Positions 2,466 through 64,000 of a DNA stretch of 64,000 nt are shown one piece after another. The notes under the pieces are model-generated. The model had not been told where the DNA came from, searched no databases, and worked only from the letters and a program-made list of their open reading frames with translations. Made by a program: the position numbers and the translations under genes. Location: IMG/VR virus record IMGVR_UViG_3300044712_001937, positions 248,001 to 312,000 of that record. The stretch is one strand, 5' to 3'. Positions within the stretch are counted from its first letter, which is position 1. The number at the start of each line of letters is the position of its first letter.

Positions 2466-3158
2466 TTAAAATAAATTTTCTACTTTGAATGACATTTCTA
2501 TGCCATCTATATTAAATACTTTGTTTCCCCAAGTATAATACTTATAACCTGAATTTTTTACAATAGGAATTATATCTTCCCTACATTTAGGGTCTGTTGA
2601 GACCGATAACTTAGAATTAAAAACGTATTTCCAACTCATTGCTTTTTCTGGAATATTGTCTTTAAGTTTTTCAGACAGTTCATCTACTGTGATTTTACAT
2701 GCATCTAAAAAATTTTCATTTCGATACCAGTTTGGACATAGATGTTCAGGTAGACCTAATCTTTCAGATTCAGTTTTCCATTCAGTTTTAACCCAATTAC
2801 CATGATTATCATATAATTCCCAACCATTATCAATTAAAAATTGTTCAGTAAATAAACTATTTTCAAACTCTTCTTTAAATTTAAGATAATTTTTATAACG
2901 ATTATTTCTTAAAGCAAGATTTTGTTTTTTATTATCTTCGATTCTATCATTAAATTCTTCATCAGTTTCTAAGCGTTTTCTATAAACTTCAAAATAATGA
3001 AAATCAGGAGTCCAACAATCATTATCATGATATCCTTCTTCAAAACTAGTTTGAATCACATCATCAGGTAAGATTGTAAACTTAACTTCTGACAATTGTA
3101 TTTTTATAGGACTATGTAATGTATAAACACATTCATCCACATATTTTTTATCTGCCAT
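2466..3158 (-). CDS. Hypothetical protein
   Basis: 230-aa ORF. Confidence 0.7.
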   Translation of the reverse strand: MADKKYVDECVYTLHSPIKIQLSEVKFTILPDDVIQTSFEEGYHDNDCWTPDFHYFEVYRKRLETDEEFNDRIEDNKKQNLALRNNRYKNYLKFKEEFENSLFTEQFLIDNGWELYDNHGNWVKTEWKTESERLGLPEHLCPNWYRNENFLDACKITVDELSEKLKDNIPEKAMSWKYVFNSKLSVSTDPKCREDIIPIVKNSGYKYYTWGNKVFNIDGIEMSFKVENLF

Positions 3159-3567
3159 TTTTTAACTGTTTTAAAATTTCAGGAAAATATTTATCGCAAG
3201 AAGAATCTTTAGTTGATACTCTATATGTATAACTGGAATTATCAAATCTCTTATGTAACCAATCATCCTTTTTAAAGAATGTATAAGAACCATATACAAT
3301 TTCTTTTCTATTAATCAATTCAAGAATTTCTTTCACGAGTTCAATTCGTTTATTAAATTTTAATATCCTTGAATATGAGGTTTTAGCACTACGATTAACA
3401 CCATCGTAATCATCACAAGTACATTCCCTTGAAACATGACAATTATGCTTAAAGCACCATCTCTCAGTTTTAGCAACTTCATAGTGCGCTGCATGTTTTC
3501 TGGGTTGTTTGGGTCTGTTTGAATTTAAACATGAACCACAAGATTTTCCTAATTTAATTTCAATCAT
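3148..3567 (-). CDS. Cys-rich hypothetical protein (possible metal binding)
   Basis: CGSCLNS...WCFKH...CTCDDY. Confidence 0.6.
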   Translation of the reverse strand: MIEIKLGKSCGSCLNSNRPKQPRKHAAHYEVAKTERWCFKHNCHVSRECTCDDYDGVNRSAKTSYSRILKFNKRIELVKEILELINRKEIVYGSYTFFKKDDWLHKRFDNSSYTYRVSTKDSSCDKYFPEILKQLKNGR

Positions 3568-3624
3568 TTAAATTGAGATAATATAAATATTTCCGGATAA
3601 ATATACGAATAATAATTTAATTTG

Positions 3625-3918
3625 TTACTTTTTATCATTATAAAAATCATGAGTTTCAATTCCGGTGGAATTTTTTATTAATTTACGAATTTCATTACCT
3701 GCCCAAAATGCCATATATTCTCTATCCTTTAAATCCATTTTTTCAGTTTCCTGTAAATCATAAATTTTATCCATTAAAACAGATGAAAATATCTTAGTAG
3801 CTGCTCTTAATGCATCATCAGAAAAGTTAGGTTTAGAACCATTAAATGCTTCAAATTCCAATAAAGCATTCTCTATTTCAACAAGTATAGGTGTTAATTT
3901 ACTTCCAATTGTTTCCAT
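3625..3918 (-). CDS. Hypothetical protein
   Basis: 97-aa ORF. Confidence 0.65.
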   Translation of the reverse strand: METIGSKLTPILVEIENALLEFEAFNGSKPNFSDDALRAATKIFSSVLMDKIYDLQETEKMDLKDREYMAFWAGNEIRKLIKNSTGIETHDFYNDKK

Positions 3919-4170
3919 TATTCTTTATTTGTCATATGTATTATTGTTATATAATTTTGTATATGTATATTACTAATGTTTTAAACACTTATGTTAATTA
4001 ATTAGTTATAAGCCATGTATCAGTTTACTATGTAAAACATCTAACCTATCGCATACAGTATTGTAATAACTTCTGTAACCATCTTCAAACTTATGTTTAT
4101 TTCTCATTTCCCTTAGTTCATTTAACATTTTATCTATTTTTTGCACTTCCGAATCACAGTTTATAGTGTA

Positions 4171-4398
4171 TTATTTTTGTTTTGGATAATAATATTTTAA
4201 ATTTATTTTTAAAATATATAAGTCCTTAATAAACTTATTCATCAAATCTCTTTCTGCGAAGAAACGAATGTTTTTTGTTCCATCTTTAAATTTGGTAGGT
4301 GGTGCTGTATTATCAATTAATTTAGATAGTTTATCTATTTCACACTCAACATCTTTAATTGATATAAATCCAAGTTTAAATAATATTATTTTTATCAT
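4171..4398 (-). CDS. Hypothetical protein; reading frame stays open for about 54 more codons after its TAA
   Basis: ORF track plus hand translation past 4171. Confidence 0.55.
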   Translation of the reverse strand: MIKIILFKLGFISIKDVECEIDKLSKLIDNTAPPTKFKDGTKNIRFFAERDLMNKFIKDLYILKINLKYYYPKQK

Positions 4399-4492
4399 AT
4401 TTAATTGGTTAGTAAATATAAAAATTATTCATCGTACTCATATAAACCAACATAATTCATCGGGTCGTTGGATAAATAACGTTTATATTCAT

Positions 4493-4699
4493 TTAATAAG
4501 TATAATTATTTATTATGTACATTTTTAAGTTTCGTAATGTCATTATCTTTATACATATCTCTTTCAATACAAATTCACCTTCTGCAACAAATGCATTTAA
4601 AATATCTACTCTTGTATACATTTTTTTATAATCTAATTCAGGAATTTCACCATATCCAGAATAACTTGTTGCTTTTTCTTTAAGTTTAATATTACTCAT
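4493..4699 (-). CDS. Hypothetical protein
   Basis: 68-aa ORF. Confidence 0.4.
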   Translation of the reverse strand: MSNIKLKEKATSYSGYGEIPELDYKKMYTRVDILNAFVAEGEFVLKEICIKIMTLRNLKMYIINNYTY

Positions 4700-4730
4700 A
4701 ATTTTAACTTAAGTATATAGTGGTTTATAT

Positions 4731-5147
4731 TTATTCTTTATCTAAAAATTTTATAAGTTTTTTAATTGCATCAAATTGTCCCCATGTTAATTGAAATCTT
4801 TGTGATAAGGTATAACAAATATCTACATCAAAACCTTCACCATTATGCCAGTACGATATTTCAATATAATCATCCTTTTTTGCAAAATAATCAATTTTTT
4901 TTAATTCTTCTCCAGAAACATTGGCAGATTTTTTTTTATATTTTTCCATAATTGTTTTTATATCATCAATATTAAAATCACTTGATTTACCTATTGTTAT
5001 TTTAGTGTTAATAAATTCAAGTTTTCGTTTCGGTACAACATTTACTGATAACCCAATACATTCCCCATCTTTATTAAGAGGTTCTAACTTGAATTCATTT
5101 ATTTCGTATCCAAGTTCTTTTTCAATCATTTCTTTTGTAATTTCCAT
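4731..5147 (-). CDS. Hypothetical phage protein (likely start MEITK at 5147)
   Basis: C-terminal DDYIEISYWHNGEGFDV segment; TAAATTTG element upstream. Confidence 0.6.
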   Translation of the reverse strand: MEITKEMIEKELGYEINEFKLEPLNKDGECIGLSVNVVPKRKLEFINTKITIGKSSDFNIDDIKTIMEKYKKKSANVSGEELKKIDYFAKKDDYIEISYWHNGEGFDVDICYTLSQRFQLTWGQFDAIKKLIKFLDKE

Positions 5148-5187
5148 AATATTGATATAAATCATCTATAATTAGCAAATTTAATCT

Positions 5188-5195
5188 GTATTTAT
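5188..5195 (+). promoter_or_regulatory. Class B (putative late) promoter GTATTTAT
   Basis: 17 nt upstream of ATG 5213; motif recurs before at least 10 other genes. Confidence 0.6.
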
Positions 5196-5212
5196 GATAA
5201 AAACAAATTATT

Positions 5213-5767
5213 ATGGATATTAAAGAGATAAAAAACGGAGATTCATTTTTAGTTAATGGCGATACATTCCTAAGTCGCACTATTTGTAAAGTAATGAAAC
5301 ATTGGGGAAAGAAGAAAGGATATAATACCACTATTCTTTACAGTCATGCAGCCAGATTTTGTTGGATTGCTGACGAATTGTATTTATTTGGTAGTGTTGA
5401 TAATGGTTATCAACCAATTAAATTTAGATTGCATTATGATTGGAATAAAGATGATTTCGCAATCATGAGACGTAAAACTGAATTAAGTGCTACTGAAGAA
5501 AAACAAACAATCAATTATTGTTTACATTTAGATACTGTAAGTGTAGGGTATCAATATTGGAATTTCATTCAATGGCTATTATTAGCATATGTAGGAATAA
5601 ATACATTCAAGAAAGGTACTAATGATAGTTTTAATTATTGCTATGAAAGTGAACGTAAATGTAGAAAAGATTTAAATCCTGAAAATTATGGTGATGTTTC
5701 TCAAACTGATATTTTTGATTTATTGTATGACCCAAATTATACAATCCTATATCGCTCTAAGAAATAA
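5213..5767 (+). CDS. Putative permuted papain-like (NlpC/P60, YiiX-like) peptidase/amidase
   Basis: N-terminal GDSFLV..., YSHAAR His motif, C-terminal YCYES Cys motif in permuted order. Confidence 0.5.
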   Translation: MDIKEIKNGDSFLVNGDTFLSRTICKVMKHWGKKKGYNTTILYSHAARFCWIADELYLFGSVDNGYQPIKFRLHYDWNKDDFAIMRRKTELSATEEKQTINYCLHLDTVSVGYQYWNFIQWLLLAYVGINTFKKGTNDSFNYCYESERKCRKDLNPENYGDVSQTDIFDLLYDPNYTILYRSKK

Positions 5768-5775
5768 CATTAAAT

Positions 5776-5820
5776 AAAAAAATCTCGCCAATTTGACGAG
5801 ATTTTGGCGAGATTTTTTTA
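5776..5820. terminator. Bidirectional terminator between convergent genes
   Basis: AAAATCTCGCCAA / TTGGCGAGATTTT stem, A/T runs on both sides; loop holds a second CGAGATT copy. Confidence 0.7.
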
Positions 5821-5829
5821 TTTAATTTA

Positions 5830-6408
5830 TTATCCGAACATTATAGCATACGTTAATCCTATTGCACCTGCAAAGAAAAATATATGTAATACTTTTACAA
5901 ACTCAACTCCTTCATATTCAGCACCCTGAATAATTTCATACTCTTTAGGTAGCCAAAATTTCCATCCATTATCTTTAACTACAATACGTCTTGTACACAT
6001 ATTTTTATAACTACGGAAAATAAAAAATGTCACTATAAACATGAATATTAACCCAATTATAATTCGCATAAAATCTTTACCTACAACTTTCCAAGCAATC
6101 ATAATCATTGTAAATCGACCAACATCTGTTTTTCCAAATTTATCGGCAACATCAACAACAGCATTTAAACCTTCTTTCACAGCAGTTCCAACTTCACCAC
6201 CGACTCCAACCCATTTTCCATAAGTATCGAGTTTCTTTTGAAGTTCAGCAGCAGTTTGTTCAGCTTTAATTTTAGTCAATTGCTCAACTGTTAAATCAGT
6301 TGCATTAACTGTAAACTTTTCAGGAGTTGAACTTTGAGCATTTGCATTAGGACAACACGCAACCACAATAACTGCGATAATTAATGATAAAATAATTTTT
6401 TTTTTCAT
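5830..6408 (-). CDS. Membrane protein with signal peptide
   Basis: N-terminal signal peptide, two or three TM segments. Confidence 0.7.
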   Translation of the reverse strand: MKKKIILSLIIAVIVVACCPNANAQSSTPEKFTVNATDLTVEQLTKIKAEQTAAELQKKLDTYGKWVGVGGEVGTAVKEGLNAVVDVADKFGKTDVGRFTMIMIAWKVVGKDFMRIIIGLIFMFIVTFFIFRSYKNMCTRRIVVKDNGWKFWLPKEYEIIQGAEYEGVEFVKVLHIFFFAGAIGLTYAIMFG

Positions 6409-6534
6409 ACGTTTAAATTTATATTAGTTCTTAAGTTTAAAATTATTAATACGTTTAAATATTAAAATTGTTGCACCAAAAATAAAAAAACCCTCACAAT
6501 ACTGCAAGGGTTTTTCAATATAATTTTTTATTAT

Positions 6535-7335
6535 TTATTTAATACCACCAACAAGAGCATTAACCGGAGTGTTACCGTATAATGGAGTTTTACCATCCCA
6601 TTTTTCGATAAACTGTTGCATAAGAATTTCTTTAGTTAAACCTTTTGATAAGTTTATATTTTCTTGTGCTTTAAGTAGTGCCAATTCATTCTTTTTCTTT
6701 TGTTCGGTAATTTGCTGGTCGATTACAGAAATATTGGTATTTACTTCATTACGACTATCAATTTTAGCTTTTACTTTATCGGTAAATTCAAGCTGGCTGG
6801 AGAATGTTAATAATTCTAATCCTTTAGCATTAAATTCTTTTTTAACTAATTCTTGCACTTTATTTTCAAATCGAAGTGAACCACCATTTGCCATTAAAGT
6901 ATCGGTAGTATACATACGTGATTCTTCTTTCATTAAATCATAAATCTTAGTTTCCAAAATATTATCTTCTAATGCTTTCATGAAATCTGAACCAGAACCT
7001 AATTGTTTATTATCAAATACAACATCAACTGCACGTTCTTTAATAATTTTATAGGAATACATAGGTTTGCTACTAAAATCAGTATTATCCGCAGCTTTCA
7101 AATGTAAAATTCTATCACCAAAATCGGCACGTTGTTCCCATAATGGAACTTGAAAAAGTTCAGTACCGGGAGCTAAAACATTAACACGACCCATTTGTAA
7201 ACTAAAATCGGATTTACCGTTTTTACCATAATTTTCCATTAAAACACCTACATAGTTAGGAGCTACACGTTCACATGAAGTGAAAATTGACAAGGCAGTT
7301 ACTGCCAATAAAAGGAACAGACTAATTTTTCTCAT
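6535..7335 (-). CDS. SPFH/band-7 domain lipoprotein
   Basis: Lipobox-like FTSC; VAPNYVGV, C-terminal QQFIEKWDGKTP typical of phage SPFH proteins. Confidence 0.8.
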   Translation of the reverse strand: MRKISLFLLLAVTALSIFTSCERVAPNYVGVLMENYGKNGKSDFSLQMGRVNVLAPGTELFQVPLWEQRADFGDRILHLKAADNTDFSSKPMYSYKIIKERAVDVVFDNKQLGSGSDFMKALEDNILETKIYDLMKEESRMYTTDTLMANGGSLRFENKVQELVKKEFNAKGLELLTFSSQLEFTDKVKAKIDSRNEVNTNISVIDQQITEQKKKNELALLKAQENINLSKGLTKEILMQQFIEKWDGKTPLYGNTPVNALVGGIK

Positions 7336-7498
7336 TAATTTTTGATTTTAATTGTTTATAAAAATAATTGATTGTTAAGCCTATAGTTAAAGCATATGCA
7401 ATATATGCTATCCAAGGATTAATGTGATTAAAAATCCAGTTTGATACAAATAGTCCAATTAAAAATGCGACTATTACAACAAGATACATTGATTTCAT
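7322..7498 (-). CDS. Small two-TM protein (58 aa, not in ORF track), SPFH partner
   Basis: Hand translation MKSMYLVVIVAFLIGLFVSNWIFNHINPWIAYIAYALTIGL...; overlaps SPFH start. Confidence 0.65.
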   Translation of the reverse strand: MKSMYLVVIVAFLIGLFVSNWIFNHINPWIAYIAYALTIGLTINYFYKQLKSKINEKN

Positions 7499-7745
7499 AT
7501 TTTAGGTTTTTATAGTTTTAAATGAAAGGGAGACTTCTGCATCATCTCCCTTCCCACAATTGTGTATAAATTCCGCATTTTCATATTTAGGTTAGGAAAA
7601 CACTGCTGCAAAATTAACCTTACTTTTACTTCTTAAAACTTTTAAAATATCTACTTCACTATTCATCCAAAAGAATGAATTTTTGATTTTCTTTTACGCA
7701 TAAAAATCACTCAAGATAGCGAGAGCACAAAACAAGCGGCATATT

Positions 7746-8576
7746 TTAAAGAACTAATTTATTTACCTTATTAAAATATTCAGGATTCAAATTTATATAA
7801 TTAATTTCAAATTTGCAAATTTTTTTTAATCTTAATGCAAAAATTGAATGTGATACTACTATAATTTGCCATTTTTGAGTTAAATTATTAATATATTCCC
7901 AATATAATTTTTGATTATCTAAATCCAAATGTGAATCTAATTCATCAATAAGTAAAGTAGGTTTTCCATCTTTAGGCATTGAATTTAACCAATTTTGAAA
8001 TATATCACTTGTTTTTACCCAAATATCATTATTAGCTTTAGGGTCTAAAGGAGATGGATATTTGGTAGTTAAATTATAAATTTTATTTAATATATTTATT
8101 GATTCTTCACCTTTAGATTTATTACTCATTATTTTTCCTAAAATCTCAATACCTGAAAACAATCCATCACTTTTAGGAAAAGGTGAATCGTAGTTTTTCC
8201 ACATATTATTAGCATCAAAAGTATCTGGAGTTAAATAATGCACCATTGAGCCATCCCAAACAATATTTGAATTAGGATAATTTATATTCCTAATATTCTT
8301 TTTAATTAAATTAGGAATATTATCCCAAGCATTATCTTCATCATTTATCATAAAATTATGAATATCGAAAGGTTTTGGCATAACCGGACTACTATTATCT
8401 TTATTAATAAAACAATTGTTTTTCAATATATTTAATAATACAGATTTACCTGAACCATTACGACCAGTAATAATATTAATACCATCACTAAAATTATAGA
8501 TTATATCTTTATTTTTTTGATGAAATAGTCTATTACTAAAATTAGTTCCCTTTAATAAAGTTATAGATTTAATCAT
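7746..8576 (-). CDS. ABC/SMC-type ATPase
   Basis: Walker A GRNGSGKS, signature-like SKGE, Walker B LLIDELDSHLD, H-loop VVSHS. Confidence 0.8.
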   Translation of the reverse strand: MIKSITLLKGTNFSNRLFHQKNKDIIYNFSDGINIITGRNGSGKSVLLNILKNNCFINKDNSSPVMPKPFDIHNFMINDEDNAWDNIPNLIKKNIRNINYPNSNIVWDGSMVHYLTPDTFDANNMWKNYDSPFPKSDGLFSGIEILGKIMSNKSKGEESINILNKIYNLTTKYPSPLDPKANNDIWVKTSDIFQNWLNSMPKDGKPTLLIDELDSHLDLDNQKLYWEYINNLTQKWQIIVVSHSIFALRLKKICKFEINYINLNPEYFNKVNKLVL

Positions 8577-59072: not shown

Positions 59073-60239
59073 TTATCTCATATTTTCAAGTATTCTATAT
59101 ACATCATCAAACTTATCAATAACAACCTTTGCTTCATTATAAGTTAATGATATATGTCTTCTTTTTCCATTAGTAATAAAAACTCCTAAATTATCCATAT
59201 CTTTTAGAAATTCATCAACTAATTTATTAGAGTTAGGAATATTTGCTTTATCCGCAACCAATTCTTTTAACTCAAGTCCACTAATTACCTTATCACCGGG
59301 ATTTGCATTACCATCACGATATATAAATGCAAGTAATGCATTATATCTGTCTTTTCTTTGATATACTTTTTCAAATCTTTGATGATTGATTTCTAATAAT
59401 TTATGTTCATAATATTCTCTAAAATAAATCCCCCATATAATAAGAATTTCATCGCATATTGTTAAAATCATGAATAAAACAATTAACCCAACATCCTTAT
59501 CTTTATTTTCTTCTTTTTGAGTATTTGAAGTTAAATTAAGGTTAGTAATTACATTTTTCAATTCATTATCAATATTTTTAATTGACAAATCATTGTTTTT
59601 TATAACATCAATATTATTATCAATATTTTTCTGATAGCCACTTCGAATATTACTATAAGTAATTGGTGTTTCAATTAATTTACTTCGTAATTCATTATTA
59701 ATTTCACGAAGTTTATTATTATCATTGATATACGATGTTTTTTTATTTTCATAAAACTTAGTTAAACTATCAATTTTACTGTAATTAACATTTTCAATAT
59801 CAGCATTAATTTTACCACTTGTAGTAGCTAAATTCATAGAACCACTAATTGCAATATAAAAACTAATACCAATAATAATTAATGTAGTTGATAACTTACC
59901 AGTTATTGCTGGTGTAAATTTTTTATTATTATCAAAATAATCAAGTGAAAAAATTTTAATTACATATCTTTTAATTATTTCAAATATTGTTAATATTAAA
60001 ACTGTTGTAACTAAAGCAATTGAAAGACCCCAAAATCCTGTTAATAAATGAACTGAGATTGCTTTCAATAAAGCTGGGAATATAAAAAAATATGCAAAAA
60101 ATATTGAGCCGATATTACCTATAAATGATACCCTGAACAACCATTTACTCAATCCTTTGTTTCTACCTTCAAAGTCCTTTTTGTTTTTTTTAGCTTTTAA
60201 TTTGTCGTAATCTTTTAAATCCATGATTTGTTTTTTCAA
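59073..60239 (-). CDS. Multi-TM protein with coiled coil and soluble C-terminal domain
   Basis: Three N-terminal TMs, Asn-rich coiled coil, one further TM. Confidence 0.7.
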   Translation of the reverse strand: MKKQIMDLKDYDKLKAKKNKKDFEGRNKGLSKWLFRVSFIGNIGSIFFAYFFIFPALLKAISVHLLTGFWGLSIALVTTVLILTIFEIIKRYVIKIFSLDYFDNNKKFTPAITGKLSTTLIIIGISFYIAISGSMNLATTSGKINADIENVNYSKIDSLTKFYENKKTSYINDNNKLREINNELRSKLIETPITYSNIRSGYQKNIDNNIDVIKNNDLSIKNIDNELKNVITNLNLTSNTQKEENKDKDVGLIVLFMILTICDEILIIWGIYFREYYEHKLLEINHQRFEKVYQRKDRYNALLAFIYRDGNANPGDKVISGLELKELVADKANIPNSNKLVDEFLKDMDNLGVFITNGKRRHISLTYNEAKVVIDKFDDVYRILENMR

Positions 60240-60259: not shown

Positions 60260-62989
60260 TTATTCGATAATAAGTGATGATATTCCGTTCTCATCCAATT
60301 CAACGTTTATAAGGTAATCAGGATTTACTTCGTGAACTTGTTCAACAATTAAAACCTTTTTCATTCCATTTTTTATTAGTTGTAAAATTTCAATAAATTC
60401 ATCAACACTACCCGCTAAATCTAATTTCCCCATTACTTCATCTAATAGAAAAATAGTAGGTTTTGCTTTGACATTAATTTGGTTTAATGCAAATTTTAAT
60501 ACTACACTTGAAAATGTTCTTTCTTTTCCACTGGCACTAATACAATCGATTATTGATTTAGGTCTACTATAATACATTAGTTTAGGTCTAAACGTATCTG
60601 GGTCAAGCCAAACTTTAAATTGTGCAACTGATAATATATTTTCCAATGTTGCGTTTATTTTAGGTAATATATAATTCCCTAACATCTGTCTTGGAATGCC
60701 ATCTCTATGAACACATTTTTTATATAAATTCATTACAGTATCCTGATACTCTTGTTCTTTAAAATCAATAATTAATCGTTCATTATATTTGATTGTTTGT
60801 TGTTTATTACCAACATTTGTTTTATTAATAAAAACATTTTCCTTTTCTTCAGATTCTTCTGATTCAAGAACTAATATTTTATCTTTAGCTGCCTTTATCC
60901 CTTTTTCAATATTTTTATTTTCTTCAATTTGTTTTAAACTATTATCATAATTGTCGATTTTTTTCTGAAGAATATCAATTTTAAGCTCTTCATTTTGAAT
61001 TTTTGTTGGAATCTGGTCTAATTCATTTTGTAGTTCCTTACGTTTTTCAACATCATTTTTATCATTAGTTAACTCACCTATTTCAATTAATACAGTTTCC
61101 ATTTCAAGAGCTGCTGTTTGAATGTTTTCATTAACTATTGCAATATCTTTTTGTTTAAGAACTATTGATGCTTTATGTGTTAAATCAATTTCGATTTCTT
61201 TATCTTTTATTATTTTAGCAATTTTAAACATTTCAGTTTCTTTTAACTTTATAACATCATCAATATTATGTTGATGTTCTTCAGTTAAGGGTTGTCCACA
61301 AGTAGGACAAATTTTACTTTCTTTTAATTCACCTATTTCTTTTTTAAACTTAGTACCATCTTGCTTTAATCTGAATATTTCGCCATTAATTATTTCAATT
61401 TTATGTTCAATATCACGAATTTCCTGTTCAATAGCTTTAATTTTAAGTTTTTCTTGATATTCATTATTTCTATGAATATCTTTCTTTTGAATTAATTCAT
61501 TTAATCTTTTATCATCATAAAAAGATTTTAATGGTTCAATACTTTCATTTAAAATCGATTTTCGTGCATTTAATTCAATAATTTTATTTCTATGAACACT
61601 TATATCATAATTTACATTATCAACCTTTAAATCGTAAATTTCAGGGTCAATTTTAAATAATTTCTTAGTTAAAGTTTCAACATAAGTTCTTCCAGTTAAA
61701 ATTCTATTTTGAATATCTGGCAATTTAACATTTTCAATTTGATTGATATTTTCTTCTAATATCTTTATATCTTGTTGTAAATTTTCAATTTCATTTGTTT
61801 TAGCTTCAACATTACAAGCAACTCTTATTTTTTCATTATTTCGTCTATTAATAATTTTCCAACCATCCATTTTTTTATCAAAAATATCTAAACCTGAATC
61901 AAATAATATTGAATCAATAAATGTTGACATATCATTCGATAATATTTTATTTAATGAATCTGAAGTAGTCATTACAATACGCATGAAATTATCATATGTA
62001 CCAATAATTGAAGTTAACTTCTTTTGAGTTTTAATTCTTTTATCCTCATCCAATTTTTCTAATGATGTATTATCATTCATTTCTTCATCCGGATTAGAAA
62101 GAATATAATAATTTAATGTTGTAGATGCACCATCAACATCACCATTTTTATCCTTAGAAATTTCAGTTTTCTTTTTAATACCATAATATTCACCATTTGA
62201 TTCAATAACAAGATATGTATCACAAGAAAGTGCACCATTTCTATTATTTACGAATCTTGAGTCACCATATTTTTGCCTAAAATCAGTTTCAGGAGCTTTA
62301 TTATAAAGCAAATATGATAAAAGTTTCATTATAGTAGTTTTTCCTGCGGTGTTAATTCCTGTGATTTGAAATAACCCATCCATATCACGCCAATCAATAT
62401 CTAATTGTTCATATGACATAAAATTATTACCACCAAATTTAATTACACTCCATTCACCGCCTATTTCATCACTTAAATCAATTTCATTAAGTACTTCTTC
62501 ATCTAATGCAATAACATCTTCAATTAATTTCTTGTCAGTACCAATTTTTTCTAAAAATTCTCTAAAAATTTCATGTTGGATAGATTTATCACTTACATTC
62601 TCCAGAGTTATATTTTTATTAACTTCAATTTTTTCACTTTCAATAAATTCATTCTTATGTAAGATAATAACATTTTTATATTTACTTTTTAAATATTGAC
62701 TTAATTTTCTTTCATTTTCATTATTTCTTGTTTGTGGAAGTGTACACCAAATAAATCTAACATGCATTTCTTTAGTAGCATCATCAATATCAAAATCTAA
62801 ATCATCAAAATCAATATACGGTGTTATTTTAACATTATGATATGAATGATAATTTTCAACAGATATTTCTTCACATGACATTGAATCTAAATTCCATAAT
62901 AAATATCCATGAAATTGACCATCACCCTCAGTAATATCTTGTGACACTAAACTACTTGAGTAACCACCAAAAATTTTTTTATTCTCCAT
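60260..62989 (-). CDS. Rad50/SbcC (gp46-like) ATPase fused to the C-terminal part of an Mre11/SbcD nuclease
   Basis: N-terminal GYSSSL..QD..EG...HGYLLW; GINTAGKTT; CPTCGQ hook; SASGKE signature; LLDEVMGKLD. Confidence 0.88.
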   Translation of the reverse strand: MENKKIFGGYSSSLVSQDITEGDGQFHGYLLWNLDSMSCEEISVENYHSYHNVKITPYIDFDDLDFDIDDATKEMHVRFIWCTLPQTRNNENERKLSQYLKSKYKNVIILHKNEFIESEKIEVNKNITLENVSDKSIQHEIFREFLEKIGTDKKLIEDVIALDEEVLNEIDLSDEIGGEWSVIKFGGNNFMSYEQLDIDWRDMDGLFQITGINTAGKTTIMKLLSYLLYNKAPETDFRQKYGDSRFVNNRNGALSCDTYLVIESNGEYYGIKKKTEISKDKNGDVDGASTTLNYYILSNPDEEMNDNTSLEKLDEDKRIKTQKKLTSIIGTYDNFMRIVMTTSDSLNKILSNDMSTFIDSILFDSGLDIFDKKMDGWKIINRRNNEKIRVACNVEAKTNEIENLQQDIKILEENINQIENVKLPDIQNRILTGRTYVETLTKKLFKIDPEIYDLKVDNVNYDISVHRNKIIELNARKSILNESIEPLKSFYDDKRLNELIQKKDIHRNNEYQEKLKIKAIEQEIRDIEHKIEIINGEIFRLKQDGTKFKKEIGELKESKICPTCGQPLTEEHQHNIDDVIKLKETEMFKIAKIIKDKEIEIDLTHKASIVLKQKDIAIVNENIQTAALEMETVLIEIGELTNDKNDVEKRKELQNELDQIPTKIQNEELKIDILQKKIDNYDNSLKQIEENKNIEKGIKAAKDKILVLESEESEEKENVFINKTNVGNKQQTIKYNERLIIDFKEQEYQDTVMNLYKKCVHRDGIPRQMLGNYILPKINATLENILSVAQFKVWLDPDTFRPKLMYYSRPKSIIDCISASGKERTFSSVVLKFALNQINVKAKPTIFLLDEVMGKLDLAGSVDEFIEILQLIKNGMKKVLIVEQVHEVNPDYLINVELDENGISSLIIE

Positions 62990-63896
62990 CTTTTAAATTT
63001 ATATCTTTAATTAATTTATCTTTAAAATCATTTAAATAAATTTCATTTTCCCAATATCTAAACAATTTAAAATTATTTTCATTAGCTAATTCATTTTTAT
63101 ATAAATCATTTAAAATGGCAATTTTTTGCATTTTATTTGGGTTAGGAAATATCTTTGGATTTCCATGCCAATAATCACCATCAATCTCAATTAAAATATT
63201 TTTTTGAGTAATAAAAAAATCATATGTTTTATATTTATGATTTTTTTTATCATAAAATATTTTAAATTGTTTCATAAAATTAATATTGTTTTCAATTAAA
63301 ATATTTTCAACAAATTTTTCAGGTTTTGTGTTTTTATTGAAACACATATCCTGTCCCATTTCCCATGAATATTTTCCATATTTTTTTAAACACGTTTTTT
63401 TCCTTTTTTCTTTAGAATCATCATCAGTTCCGAACCAATATCCAAGTTCTTTATATTTTTTAATCGTACCATTTTTTATTTTATTTCTATATTCCTCAGA
63501 TTCCCACAATTTTTTTGCTACTATAGAATGTTTTAATTTAGTTTCATTACTATGTTTCAATATTCTATTATCAGGATTATATATTCCCAATTTATTCCCT
63601 ATTTCATATATATTCCTACATTGTTTTGAACAAAATTGTTTATTTTTTCTCAATTTTAATCTTTTAAAATTAATACCACAATTTAAACAATTAATATTTT
63701 CCCATTTTTCATTTTTTATCCCAGAATTACCAATATGTTGACAATTTTCAGAACAATAAACTTTATTTGGTGTAGATTTTCCACATGTTAAACATTTTCT
63801 TTGTTTATTTTTAAAATCAACTGATTGACATTGTTTTGAACAAAATGTTTTATTTTTTGTTTCTTTACCACAAATTATACAATTATGTGCTTCCAT
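62979..63896 (-). mobile_element. Homing endonuclease gene (CxxC zinc ribbons plus DUF559/Vsr-like PD-(D/E)xK domain) inserted in the Mre11-Rad50 gene
   Basis: Three CxxC...FCSxxC repeats; TKPEKF, YDFFI, IEIDGDYWHG; class B promoter 63920-63927. Confidence 0.82.
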
Positions 63897-63947
63897 AAAA
63901 TTTTACTATATTAGTAAATATAAATACTCATTAATATAATAAAATTT

Positions 63948-63998
63948 TCAAGACCTATAGAATAATTGTTTTTTATGAATGTGTCCAAAAAAAGACAA
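63948..63998 (-). CDS. 3' end of the N-terminal Mre11/SbcD phosphoesterase fragment (partial, window edge)
   Basis: Hand translation LSFFGHIHKKQLFYRS*; GHIH is the last metal-binding motif of Mre11/SbcD. Confidence 0.7.
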   Translation of the reverse strand: MSFFGHIHKKQLFYRS

Positions 63999-64000
63999 AT

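What the first reader, a model, noticed from the sequence alone, without database searches (positions are those of the whole stretch)
60260..63998. Mre11-Rad50 (SbcDC) fusion gene split inside the nuclease domain by a free-standing homing endonuclease
Seen: the upstream fragment ends ...FFGHIHKKQLFYRS* (63948). The HEG follows with its own promoter. The next ORF starts overlapping the HEG stop with MENKKIFGGYSSSL..., the motif that normally follows GHIH within a few residues, and continues into a full Rad50 ATPase. The junctions are short and AT-rich, with no visible intron core or intein motifs. Known precedent: Aeh1 nrdA split by mobE forms a composite active site from two polypeptides. A natural nuclease-ATPase fusion that is then split in trans would be a new example.
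Basis: partly seen in the sequence, partly recalled or inferred. Interest (0 to 1): 0.7.

Follow-up and report, generated by a model that had tools for sequence, protein, structure and literature searches.

The report
Phage Mre11-Rad50 gene split by endonuclease
A 365-kb phage carries its fused Mre11-Rad50 DNA-repair gene in two pieces because a selfish Vsr-like (EDxHD) homing-endonuclease gene sits inside the nuclease domain; this is real, but a very similar case was reported in 2009.

Summary
The sequence observation holds. On the minus strand, a 204-aa ORF carries Mre11 motifs I-V and ends at TGA 63950-63948; only its last 17 codons lie in the window. A 51-nt spacer follows, then a 305-aa ORF (62979-63896). 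A 909-aa ORF (60260-62989) overlaps that ORF's end by 11 nt. It supplies the remaining Mre11 strands, the capping region and a complete Rad50.

Fifteen IMG/VR relatives, LR756501.1 and Microcystis phage Mel-JY01 have one uninterrupted reading frame of about 1070-1200 aa. The insertion maps to a variable loop five codons after the motif V histidine.

The inserted ORF is a Vsr-like/EDxHD homing endonuclease with three zinc modules. All seven homologues I looked up sit at this same site. Split genes are scattered among whole ones on the host-gene tree. The endonuclease's synonymous divergence is lower than that of its flanks, which suggests mobility.

No intron or intein is present, and the spacer is a hairpin rather than a detectable promoter. 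A complex prediction supports reassembly of the two fragments (0.92; best control 0.00).

Dassa et al. 2009 already described an SbcD-like gene fractured by a Vsr-like endonuclease. This is therefore a new member of a known kind.

The parts
63948..64000 (-). 3' end of the N-fragment gene: its last 17 codons plus TGA. The full gene is 204 aa and corresponds to window 63948-64562 (G000:C1:311948-312562, L001:3449-4063). It carries Mre11/SbcD motifs I (DIH), II (GDLVHD), III (GNHD), IV (LFHD) and V (GHIH, 63975-63986).
   Evidence: Pfam Metallophos E 7.5e-16. PHROG SbcD-like and phrog_35725. PDB profile hits to SbcD and Mre11 at about E 1e-9. All family-invariant residues are present.
63897..63948 (-). 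Hairpin that fills the spacer between the N-fragment stop and the endonuclease ATG. It has a 17 + 6 bp stem. It probably occludes the endonuclease's translation start; that role is inferred.
   Evidence: -18 to -20 kcal/mol, z -4.8/-4.9, and 0 of 200 shuffles fold as well. Hairpins sit in the same position in five of six related loci that have a spacer (L029, L034, L032, L036, L030; z -2.6 to -8.2); L028 has only a degenerate copy (z -1.2). Hairpins 5' of free-standing endonuclease genes are described in PMC2677866.
62979..63896 (-). Free-standing homing-endonuclease-type ORF of 305 aa. It has three CxxC...CxxxC zinc modules (aa 6-93, 63618-63881), a helical middle part and a Vsr-like/EDxHD nuclease domain (aa ~188-300, 62997-63335). 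The nuclease domain carries E237, D239, H244 (63162-63188) and D264.
62979..62989 (-). 11-nt overlap (ATGGAGAATAA) between the end of the endonuclease ORF and the start codon of the C-fragment ORF.
   Evidence: Overlaps occur in all related split loci, and overlaps of 6-69 bp are reported in PMC2677866.
62600..62989 (-). C fragment aa 1-130: the native loop, two core beta-strands of the Mre11 phosphoesterase fold (YSSSL 62948-62962; FHGYLLW about 62903-62929) and the capping region.
   Evidence: Alignment with uninterrupted relatives. Weak profile match to T. maritima Mre11 residues 219-252. Predicted contacts of aa 4-15 and 25-35 with N-fragment residues 2-12 and 188-203.
62459..62593 (-). 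C fragment aa 133-177: helical linker between the Mre11 part and Rad50. It may correspond to the Rad50-binding helices of Mre11.
   Evidence: Only a sub-threshold profile alignment to T. maritima Mre11 residues 334-368. This is an inference.
60260..62458 (-). C fragment aa 178-909 plus stop: Rad50/SbcC ATPase. Walker A is at 62333-62359, the zinc hook CPTC at 61298-61309, the signature motif at 60512-60538 and Walker B at 60437-60454.
   Evidence: Pfam AAA_23 E 8.5e-11 and Rad50_zn_hook E 7.2e-6. PHROG 77 SbcC-like E 5e-20. Motif positions.

Best explanation
A mobile cassette sits in the phage's single Mre11-Rad50 fusion gene. The cassette is a stop codon, a hairpin spacer, a Vsr-like/EDxHD homing-endonuclease gene and a new start codon. 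It lies in the loop-coding DNA five codons after the motif V histidine.

Shown: the gene is now two ORFs. One encodes 204 aa with all metal-binding motifs. The other encodes 909 aa with the last core strands of the nuclease fold, the capping region and Rad50. Uninterrupted alleles exist in sister lineages, and nothing is lost at the junction.

Inferred: the three ORFs are co-transcribed, and the hairpin limits translation of the endonuclease. The C fragment starts at the ATG that overlaps the endonuclease stop. The two polypeptides reassemble non-covalently by beta-sheet complementation into a working Mre11-Rad50. No RNA or protein splicing is involved, as in the mobE-split NrdA of phage Aeh1. 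The endonuclease cuts uninterrupted alleles near the GDIH-x-x-Q coding sequence during co-infection. Recombinational repair then copies the cassette in.
For: Architecture.

Uninterrupted orthologues, and the junction mapped to a loop of variable length.

The endonuclease belongs to the Vsr-like/EDxHD family. Profile hit to I-Bth0305I (3r3p), E 0.0016. The model has pLDDT 83.9. Foldseek gives Vsr 1cw0 at E 3e-4 and 3r3p at TM 0.75. E, D, H and D are invariant. Relatives carry DUF559, Vsr and NUMOD3.

Same site in all seven homologues looked up.

Sporadic distribution. The tree needs at least 6 state changes, and each split gene is sister to a whole one. The AU test rejects WINDOW+L028 as a clade (p 0.007) and rejects it with L029 added (p 1e-101).

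Synonymous difference between the window and L028. It is 0.37 (95% 0.29-0.45) in the endonuclease, 0.57 in the N fragment and 0.55 in the C fragment. It falls towards the junction in N. dN/dS is 0.21-0.26 for all three ORFs.

Reassembly. Complex prediction score 0.92, best of 3 controls 0.00. That mark was reached by 58 of 80 solved complexes and 2 of 110 mismatched pairs. The runs agree in at least 95% of contacts and partner pLDDT is 76-78. My own alignments were used.

No second Mre11-Rad50 exists in the genome. No intron was found. Conserved hairpin. Precedents: PMC2677866, PMC3045599, PMC3239194.
Against: No RNA data exist for this phage. Only DNA runs were found, so co-transcription and the absence of splicing are not shown directly.

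The complex prediction is fold complementation of a known single-chain fold and may score high from memory.

The window's endonuclease lacks a 23-aa repeat module that nearly all of the 31 aligned relatives have, so it may no longer bind or cut its target.

Endonuclease identity tracks host-gene identity across all split loci. That also fits long vertical co-inheritance with losses.

Synonymous sites in the flanks are near saturation, so the dS contrast is approximate.
Confidence: 0.8

Rival explanations
1. The inserted ORF is no longer, or never was, a selfish homing endonuclease. Instead it is a stably co-inherited or domesticated partner of the Mre11-Rad50 machine, and the split is an old fixed gene arrangement.
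For: All seven homologues examined occupy the same place. Endonuclease identity tracks host-gene identity from 78/67% down to 32/27%. dN/dS is 0.26. The ORFs overlap and the hairpin is conserved.
Against: Split genes are scattered among whole ones, and each is sister to a whole one. Most relatives are whole. Synonymous divergence is lower in the endonuclease than in its flanks. The family's characterised member is a true homing enzyme (PMC3239194). Strict site fidelity is what a site-specific homing endonuclease is expected to show.
Confidence: 0.1
2. The insertion inactivated the nuclease. The two ORFs are remnants, or only the Rad50 part still works, and they do not reassemble.
For: No functional data exist. 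The break lies inside a single fold. The window variant lacks the cassette-borne tail peptides that other split variants carry. Such tails are essential for the split NrdA (PMC3045599).
Against: Both ORFs are intact and keep every family-invariant residue. dN/dS is 0.21 and 0.25 against a split relative. Split arrangements with intact ORFs persist in lineages only 27-67% identical. This is the only Mre11-Rad50 in the genome. The complex prediction passes its controls.
Confidence: 0.07
3. The endonuclease lies in a self-splicing intron, or the fragments are joined by a split intein, so one continuous protein is made.
For: EDxHD endonucleases also occur in group I introns and next to split inteins (PMC2677866). 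Relatives of this very gene carry an intein at motif III.
Against: No Rfam family matches at E<=1. Non-coding sequence is only 51 nt upstream and none downstream. The C fragment has an in-frame ATG exactly at the junction in every split locus. Only 3 extra residues lie on each side, too few for intein halves, and no Cys/Ser/Thr nucleophile sits at the junction.
Confidence: 0.03

Closest known systems
SbcD-like gene fractured by a Vsr-like putative homing endonuclease (GOS Lake Gatun locus; Dassa et al. 2009, NAR 37:2560, PMC2677866)
   Same: The host enzyme type is the same (SbcD/Mre11), and so is the endonuclease family. There is no intein. A hairpin lies 5' of the endonuclease ORF, and the endonuclease's 3' end overlaps the downstream fragment's start.
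   Different: That locus has a 25-residue C-tail and a 9-residue N-head not found in whole genes. I see this variant in L034, L007, L030, L032 and L036. The window's variant is essentially seamless, with 3 + 3 residues. Here the downstream fragment is shown to continue into a complete Rad50, so the host is a fusion gene. I did not compare the sequences directly.
Phage Aeh1 nrdA split by mobE (genes-in-pieces ribonucleotide reductase; Crona et al. 2011, PMC3045599)
   Same: A free-standing homing-endonuclease gene splits an essential enzyme gene. The fragments are translated separately and reassemble without RNA or protein splicing. Endonuclease expression is damped by RNA structure.
   Different: The endonuclease family (HNH) and the host gene differ. 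In Aeh1, cassette-derived charged tails are essential, whereas the window's fragments have almost no tails. The Aeh1 case is shown biochemically; here function is inferred.
I-Bth0305I, prototype of the EDxHD homing-endonuclease family (Taylor et al. 2011, PMC3239194; PDB 3r3p)
   Same: The C-terminal nuclease domain has the same Vsr-like fold and the same E, D, H, D residues. Both are bipartite, with an N-terminal DNA-binding part and a C-terminal nuclease domain.
   Different: I-Bth0305I is encoded in a group I intron of recA. The window's ORF is free-standing and has three zinc modules at its N-terminus. Its activity was not tested.
T4 gp47/gp46 and bacterial SbcD/SbcC
   Same: The same two activities are present, with the same motifs: phosphoesterase motifs I-V, Walker A/B, signature motif and zinc hook.
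   Different: In T4 and bacteria these are two genes cut between Mre11 and Rad50. In this phage clade they are fused, and here they are re-cut at a different place, inside the nuclease domain.

Membership tests
Mre11/SbcD nuclease (calcineurin-like phosphoesterase) | Phosphoesterase motifs I-V with their metal ligands (D-x-H, G-D, G-N-H-D/E, H, G-x-x-H) | tested here: met
   All five motifs are present in the N fragment. They are invariant in a 41-sequence alignment. Pfam Metallophos E 7.5e-16. PDB profile hits to SbcD and Mre11 at about E 1e-9.
Mre11/SbcD nuclease (calcineurin-like phosphoesterase) | A complete fold: the strands after motif V (Y-x-G/S-S-L ... F-G-E) and the capping domain | tested here: met
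   They are present, but on the other polypeptide (C fragment aa 1-130). Supported by alignment with whole relatives, a weak match to T. maritima Mre11 residues 219-252 and predicted strand pairing with the N fragment.
Rad50/SbcC ATPase | Walker A, Q-loop, signature motif, Walker B and H-loop, separated by a coiled coil with a CxxC zinc hook | tested here: met
   AAA_23 and Rad50_zn_hook. PHROG 77. The coiled coil is inferred from composition only.
EDxHD / Vsr-like homing endonucleases | Vsr-like nuclease fold | tested here: met
   The model has mean pLDDT 83.9, and above 90 over most of the nuclease domain. The best Foldseek PDB matches are Vsr 1cw0 (E 3e-4) and I-Bth0305I 3r3p (TM 0.74-0.75 by target).
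EDxHD / Vsr-like homing endonucleases | Conserved catalytic residues E, D, H, D | tested here: met
   E237, D239, H244 and D264 are invariant in 32 sequences, including the window's. Profile match to 3r3p at E 0.0016.
EDxHD / Vsr-like homing endonucleases | Site-specific cleavage of the empty allele, and mobility | not testable with these tools
   Only indirect evidence: the same site in 7 of 7 homologues, scattered presence and lower synonymous divergence than the flanks. The window's copy lacks a 23-aa module.
Genes-in-pieces made by a free-standing homing endonuclease (fractured gene without an intein) | Two ORFs that together equal one uninterrupted homologue, with an endonuclease ORF between them | tested here: met
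Genes-in-pieces made by a free-standing homing endonuclease (fractured gene without an intein) | The fragments assemble into an active enzyme | tested here: inconclusive
   The complex prediction passes: 0.92 against a best control of 0.00. Both fragments are under purifying selection. There is no biochemical test.
Group I / group II intron | A ribozyme core flanking the endonuclease ORF | tested here: not met
   0 Rfam matches at E<=1 over L001:2300-4200. There are 51 nt of spacer upstream and none downstream.
Intein / split intein | Intein blocks (N-terminal Cys/Ser, C-terminal His-Asn followed by a nucleophile) at the junction | tested here: not met
   Only YRS and MEN are extra at the junction. 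By contrast, relatives L014, L019 and L020 carry a clear 323-aa intein at motif III.

The most novel reading that the evidence does not exclude
One lineage of EDxHD endonucleases may have specialised for a single site in phage Mre11-Rad50 fusion genes and persisted there across very divergent huge phages (host proteins down to 27% identical). It would have evolved two ways of neutralising the split. One uses cassette-borne acidic-tail and basic-head peptides. The other, as here, is a seamless cut in a loop. Because the element sits in the end-resection machine that recombination-dependent homing needs, endonuclease and host enzyme may be functionally coupled rather than merely tolerated.
Probability: 0.15. 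Interest if true: 0.6.

Novelty: new member of a known kind. Interest (0 to 1): 0.35.

Why it matters
It adds a clear, complete-genome example to the small set of genes split by free-standing homing endonucleases. The cut goes through the core beta-sheet of a well-understood nuclease and leaves almost no added tail peptides. That makes it a useful natural test of how much a split enzyme needs helper tails.

The comparative set found here gives ready material for testing endonuclease target recognition, homing and fragment assembly. It includes whole alleles, seamless splits, splits with tails and intein-bearing alleles of one gene.

It also shows that Mre11-Rad50 fusions are common in large environmental phages, yet database annotations name them only as 'metallo-phosphoesterase' or 'AAA domain' proteins.

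Tried and rejected
Rfam search of the insertion and both junctions: nothing at E<=1. An intron is therefore rejected.

Promoter and terminator scan: promoter-like sites are at the shuffle level and there are no terminator-like sites.

Sequencing runs: only three DNA runs from rhizosphere metagenomes, and no RNA. Logan contigs are short and low in depth. The listed joints (565>3049, 3368>3617) have sides of only 20-21 nt and are probably spurious. No endonuclease-free allele was seen.

Pattern scan of IMG/VR with the endonuclease found no relatives. The protein-cluster search did find them.

Search for endonuclease paralogues in the phage's own genome: none, apart from one weak nuclease-domain match.

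A second Metallophos ORF (G000 157923-158453) is a small unrelated phosphoesterase, not a second Mre11.

Literature search for a named 'Mre11-Rad50 fusion' in phages returned only unrelated eukaryotic papers. This does not show that it is undescribed.

BLASTP of the window's endonuclease against the 305-aa ORF that splits the gene in LR756508.1 found only the zinc modules alike (31% over 91 aa). Homology of their nuclease domains is not shown.
Full report
WHERE THE WINDOW LIES. The window is G000:C1:248001-312000 of a 364,702-bp virus record with direct terminal repeats. GC here is 20-28% and all genes of the region are on the minus strand. The only public runs that hold the sequence are DNA runs from rhizosphere metagenomes.

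THE OBSERVATION.
- Read on the minus strand, the frame entering the window at 64000 ends ...DLSFFGHIHKKQLFYRS, with TGA at 63950-63948.
- Extending into the genome (L001) shows a 204-aa ORF starting MINKIAHLADIH. It corresponds to window 63948-64562.
- After a 51-nt spacer, a 305-aa ORF runs from ATG 63896 to TAA 62981-62979.
- The next ORF starts at ATG 62989, inside the last 11 nt of that ORF, and runs 909 aa to 60260.
- Contigs from a third, independent run cover both junctions without a single difference (records 19 and 21). The arrangement is therefore not an assembly artefact.

WHAT THE TWO FLANKING ORFS ARE.
- The 204-aa protein matches Pfam Metallophos (E 7.5e-16) and the PHROG SbcD-like family.
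- A profile built from it and 40 relatives hits solved SbcD and Mre11 structures at about E 1e-9.
- Motifs I-V are all present and invariant in the family.
- The 909-aa protein has AAA_23, the Rad50 zinc hook (CPTC, aa 561-564), Walker A, a signature motif and Walker B. It also matches PHROG 77, SbcC-like.
- Both fragments match successive parts of one long PHROG profile, phrog_35725 (positions 6-229 and 265-882 of 1376). That was the first hint of a fusion family.

THE UNINTERRUPTED ALLELE EXISTS.
- In LR756501.1 the tblastn matches of the two fragments abut to the nucleotide, inside one 1202-aa ORF.
- In Microcystis phage Mel-JY01 both fragments lie in one annotated 1066-aa CDS.
- Of 18 IMG/VR relatives that are 42-69% identical to the C fragment, 15 have one continuous ORF of about 1100 aa. 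The other three carry an in-frame intein, described below.
- Of the 150 best cluster representatives related to the N fragment, 96 are longer than 1000 aa.
- The Mre11-Rad50 fusion is therefore the common state in this phage group, and the window's split is the derived state.

WHERE THE BREAK IS.
- Whole relatives read G-D-I-H-x-x-Q-[FY]-[FL], then a loop of 4-12 variable residues, then [AG]-Y-x-[GS]-S-L-I-x-Q..F-G-E..H-G-Y.
- The window reads GHIHKKQLF + YRS-stop, and M-E-N + KKIFGGYSSSL. Some whole relatives have almost the same loop, for example ...NRDKKIFGGYCSSL in P0088.
- Nothing is missing, and at most three residues are added on each side.
- The C-fragment profile aligns, weakly but in the expected place, with T. 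maritima Mre11 residues 219-252. These are the strand after motif V.
- The cut is therefore inside the phosphoesterase fold, in a surface loop.

THE INSERTED ORF.
- It has three CxxC...CxxxC modules (aa 6-93), a helical middle part and a C-terminal domain reading ...YDFF...LIEIDGDYWHGNP...ND...RYW.
- A 32-sequence alignment shows E237, D239, H244 and D264 invariant.
- Its profile hits I-Bth0305I (3r3p, 'mobile intron protein') at E 0.0016.
- Relatives carry DUF559, Vsr, DUF7487 and NUMOD3.
- The AlphaFold model has pLDDT 83.9. Its best PDB matches are Vsr (1cw0, E 3e-4) and I-Bth0305I (TM 0.74-0.75 by target).
- This is the Vsr-like family predicted by Dassa et al. 2009 (PMC2677866) and named EDxHD by Taylor et al. 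2011 (PMC3239194).
- The window's copy lacks a 23-aa 'CLKKYG' repeat module found in nearly all of the 31 aligned relatives, so its present activity is uncertain.

IS IT MOBILE?
- All seven homologues I looked up (36-72% identical by the search table) lie immediately after a 195-240-aa Metallophos ORF. Each is followed by the rest of the gene. This endonuclease lineage is therefore tied to this one site.
- On a tree of the host proteins, the split state needs at least six changes. Each split gene is sister to a whole one: window with L010/L012, L028 with L018, L029 with L027, L034 with L006, and L007 with L008.
- The AU test rejects a clade of window + L028 (p 0.007). With L029 added it rejects it at p 1e-101.
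- Between the window and its nearest split relative L028, the proportion of synonymous differences is 0.37 (95% 0.29-0.45) in the endonuclease. It is 0.57 in the N fragment and 0.55 in the C fragment.
- In the N fragment this proportion falls towards the junction: 0.66, 0.66, 0.55, 0.41. This fits cassette transfer with co-conversion of flanks after the hosts diverged. The flanks are near saturation, so the contrast is approximate.
- Against that, endonuclease identity tracks host identity over all split loci. Long vertical association with repeated loss therefore cannot be excluded.

IS THE SPLIT ENZYME STILL FUNCTIONAL?
- dN/dS against L028 is 0.21 for the N fragment, 0.25 for the C fragment and 0.26 for the endonuclease.
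- Both fragments keep every invariant residue.
- Intact split arrangements persist in lineages only 27-67% identical.
- The genome has no second Mre11-Rad50.
- The complex prediction for the 204-aa fragment with aa 1-185 of the C fragment scored 0.92, and the best of 3 controls scored 0.00. That mark was reached by 58 of 80 solved complexes and 2 of 110 mismatched pairs. The runs agree in at least 95% of contacts and partner pLDDT is 76-78. My own alignments were used, so the calibration counts hold only roughly.
- The confident contacts place C residues 29-32 (YLLW) against N residues 4-7, the first strand, which leads into motif I. They place C residues 8-10 against N residues 192-201.
- This is what a complemented phosphoesterase sheet should look like. 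It is also what a model would recall from single-chain Mre11 structures, so it supports binding but does not show it.

EXPRESSION.
- Promoter-like sites are not enriched: 20 found, 22.3 expected.
- The whole spacer (63897-63948) forms one hairpin that ends 1 nt before the endonuclease ATG (z -4.9).
- Hairpins at the same position, with different sequences, occur in L029 (z -8.2), L034 (-5.6), L032 (-3.7), L036 (-3.4) and L030 (-2.6). In L029, L034 and L036 the stem includes the AUG.
- The same features were reported for free-standing endonucleases in fractured genes, including the SbcD-like locus: a 5' hairpin and an overlap of 6-69 bp with the downstream ORF. MobE expression is known to be inhibited by RNA structure.
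- I infer one polycistronic transcript with damped endonuclease translation. There are no RNA data to test this.

WHAT IT IS NOT.
- No Rfam family, and so no group I or II intron, matches the region at E<=1.
- There is no non-coding sequence downstream of the endonuclease.
- Three residues per side leave no room for intein halves.

COMPARISON WITH WHAT IS KNOWN.
- The closest precedent is not Aeh1 nrdA/mobE. It is the Lake Gatun locus of Dassa et al. [quoted passage not shown] That locus has no intein, 25 extra C-terminal residues and 9 extra N-terminal residues.
- I find that tail-bearing variant in L034, whose 25-residue tail is NFREIELEVDEEELDKYLKDGWKIV. I also find it in L007, L030, L032 and L036, with a conserved acidic tail (E-x-x-L-x-x-Y-x-x-x-G-W) and a basic head (M-x-K-[IV]-K-[IV]-K-K).
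- Comparison of L034 with its whole sister L006 shows that tail and head came with the cassette.
- The window, L028 and L029 are a tail-less, seamless variant.
- Crona et al. 2011 showed that such tails are essential for the split NrdA. Whether the seamless Mre11 split needs none is open.

VERDICT. The finding is a new, well-documented member of a known kind. It gains some interest from three things: the host is a fusion gene, the split is seamless, and the comparative series found here is rich. Interest 0.35.

Noticed in passing
L014:2663-3631, L019:2666-3634 (and L020, identical to L014): Three relatives carry an in-frame 323-aa intein in the same gene, directly after motif III (GNHD). It starts CFTGDHEILT and ends ...FITGN, followed by Cys. 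L024 is almost identical to L014 but lacks it (branch lengths 0.006-0.008). The window has the empty site (GNHD|C). The gene is therefore a hot spot for two kinds of mobile element.
   Followed up: partly
L034:3261-3935 and 4872-7907; L007:1027-1758 and 2667-5252; also L030, L032, L036: More distant split variants carry a conserved acidic tail of about 25 aa on the N fragment (E-x-x-L-x-x-Y-x-x-x-G-W-x-[IVL]) and a basic head on the C fragment (M-x-K-[IV]-K-[IV]-K-K). Whole sister genes lack both. These are probably cassette-borne assembly peptides like the NrdA tails of Aeh1. They match the 25 + 9 residues reported in 2009.
   Followed up: partly
window 62979-63896 (aa ~168-170 of the 305-aa ORF): The window's endonuclease lacks a 23-aa module. 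This is the first of two 'T-C-L-K-K-Y-G' repeats present in nearly all of the 31 aligned relatives. It looks like a deletion between the repeats and may signal decay of DNA binding.
   Followed up: no
L030:4890-8155 and L036:4903-8166: In two lineages the gene is fragmented further. A 75-76-aa ORF holds the strands after motif V and ends in the capping region. Two or three small unrelated ORFs follow, and then a 774-783-aa ORF presumed (by position only, no Pfam hit) to be Rad50.
   Followed up: no
L032:3397-3948: One split locus has an extra 183-aa ORF with an ExoX-like_C domain between the N fragment and the endonuclease.
   Followed up: no
L028:4819-5646: The closest split relative also has a 275-aa LAGLIDADG_3 (weak) ORF directly downstream of the Rad50 end. 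The window has no such ORF there. It is probably a second free-standing homing endonuclease.
   Followed up: no
proteins P0059 (520 aa) and P0094 (551 aa): These N-fragment relatives show a gap of about 320 aa at motif III and also end a few residues after GDIH-x-x-Q. They may be alleles invaded by both the intein and the endonuclease cassette. Contig truncation is not excluded.
   Followed up: no
G000:C1:339919-340230 (outside the window): There is a weak second match to the endonuclease's nuclease domain elsewhere in the phage genome (36% over 109 aa, E 0.004). It may be another Vsr-like ORF.
   Followed up: no
L001:4237-4641 (+) and 4690-4938 (-), just beyond the window end: Upstream of the N fragment lie a 134-aa ORF that looks like a small heat-shock protein and an 82-aa ORF resembling the C-terminal end of a sigma factor. 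In a relative the corresponding neighbours carry HSP20 and Sigma70_r2 (Sigma70_r4 only faint) Pfam hits. The downstream 388-aa membrane-protein gene (window 59073-60239) is likewise conserved next to the gene in relatives.
   Followed up: no
annotation of relatives (PP395634.1, NC_049383.1, NC_049340.1, phrog_35725): Whole Mre11-Rad50 fusion proteins of cultured phages (Microcystis Mel-JY01, and apparently Tenacibaculum pT24 and PTm1) are annotated only as 'AAA domain containing protein', 'metallo-phosphoesterase' or 'DNA repair exonuclease'. I found no paper that names the fusion.
   Followed up: partly
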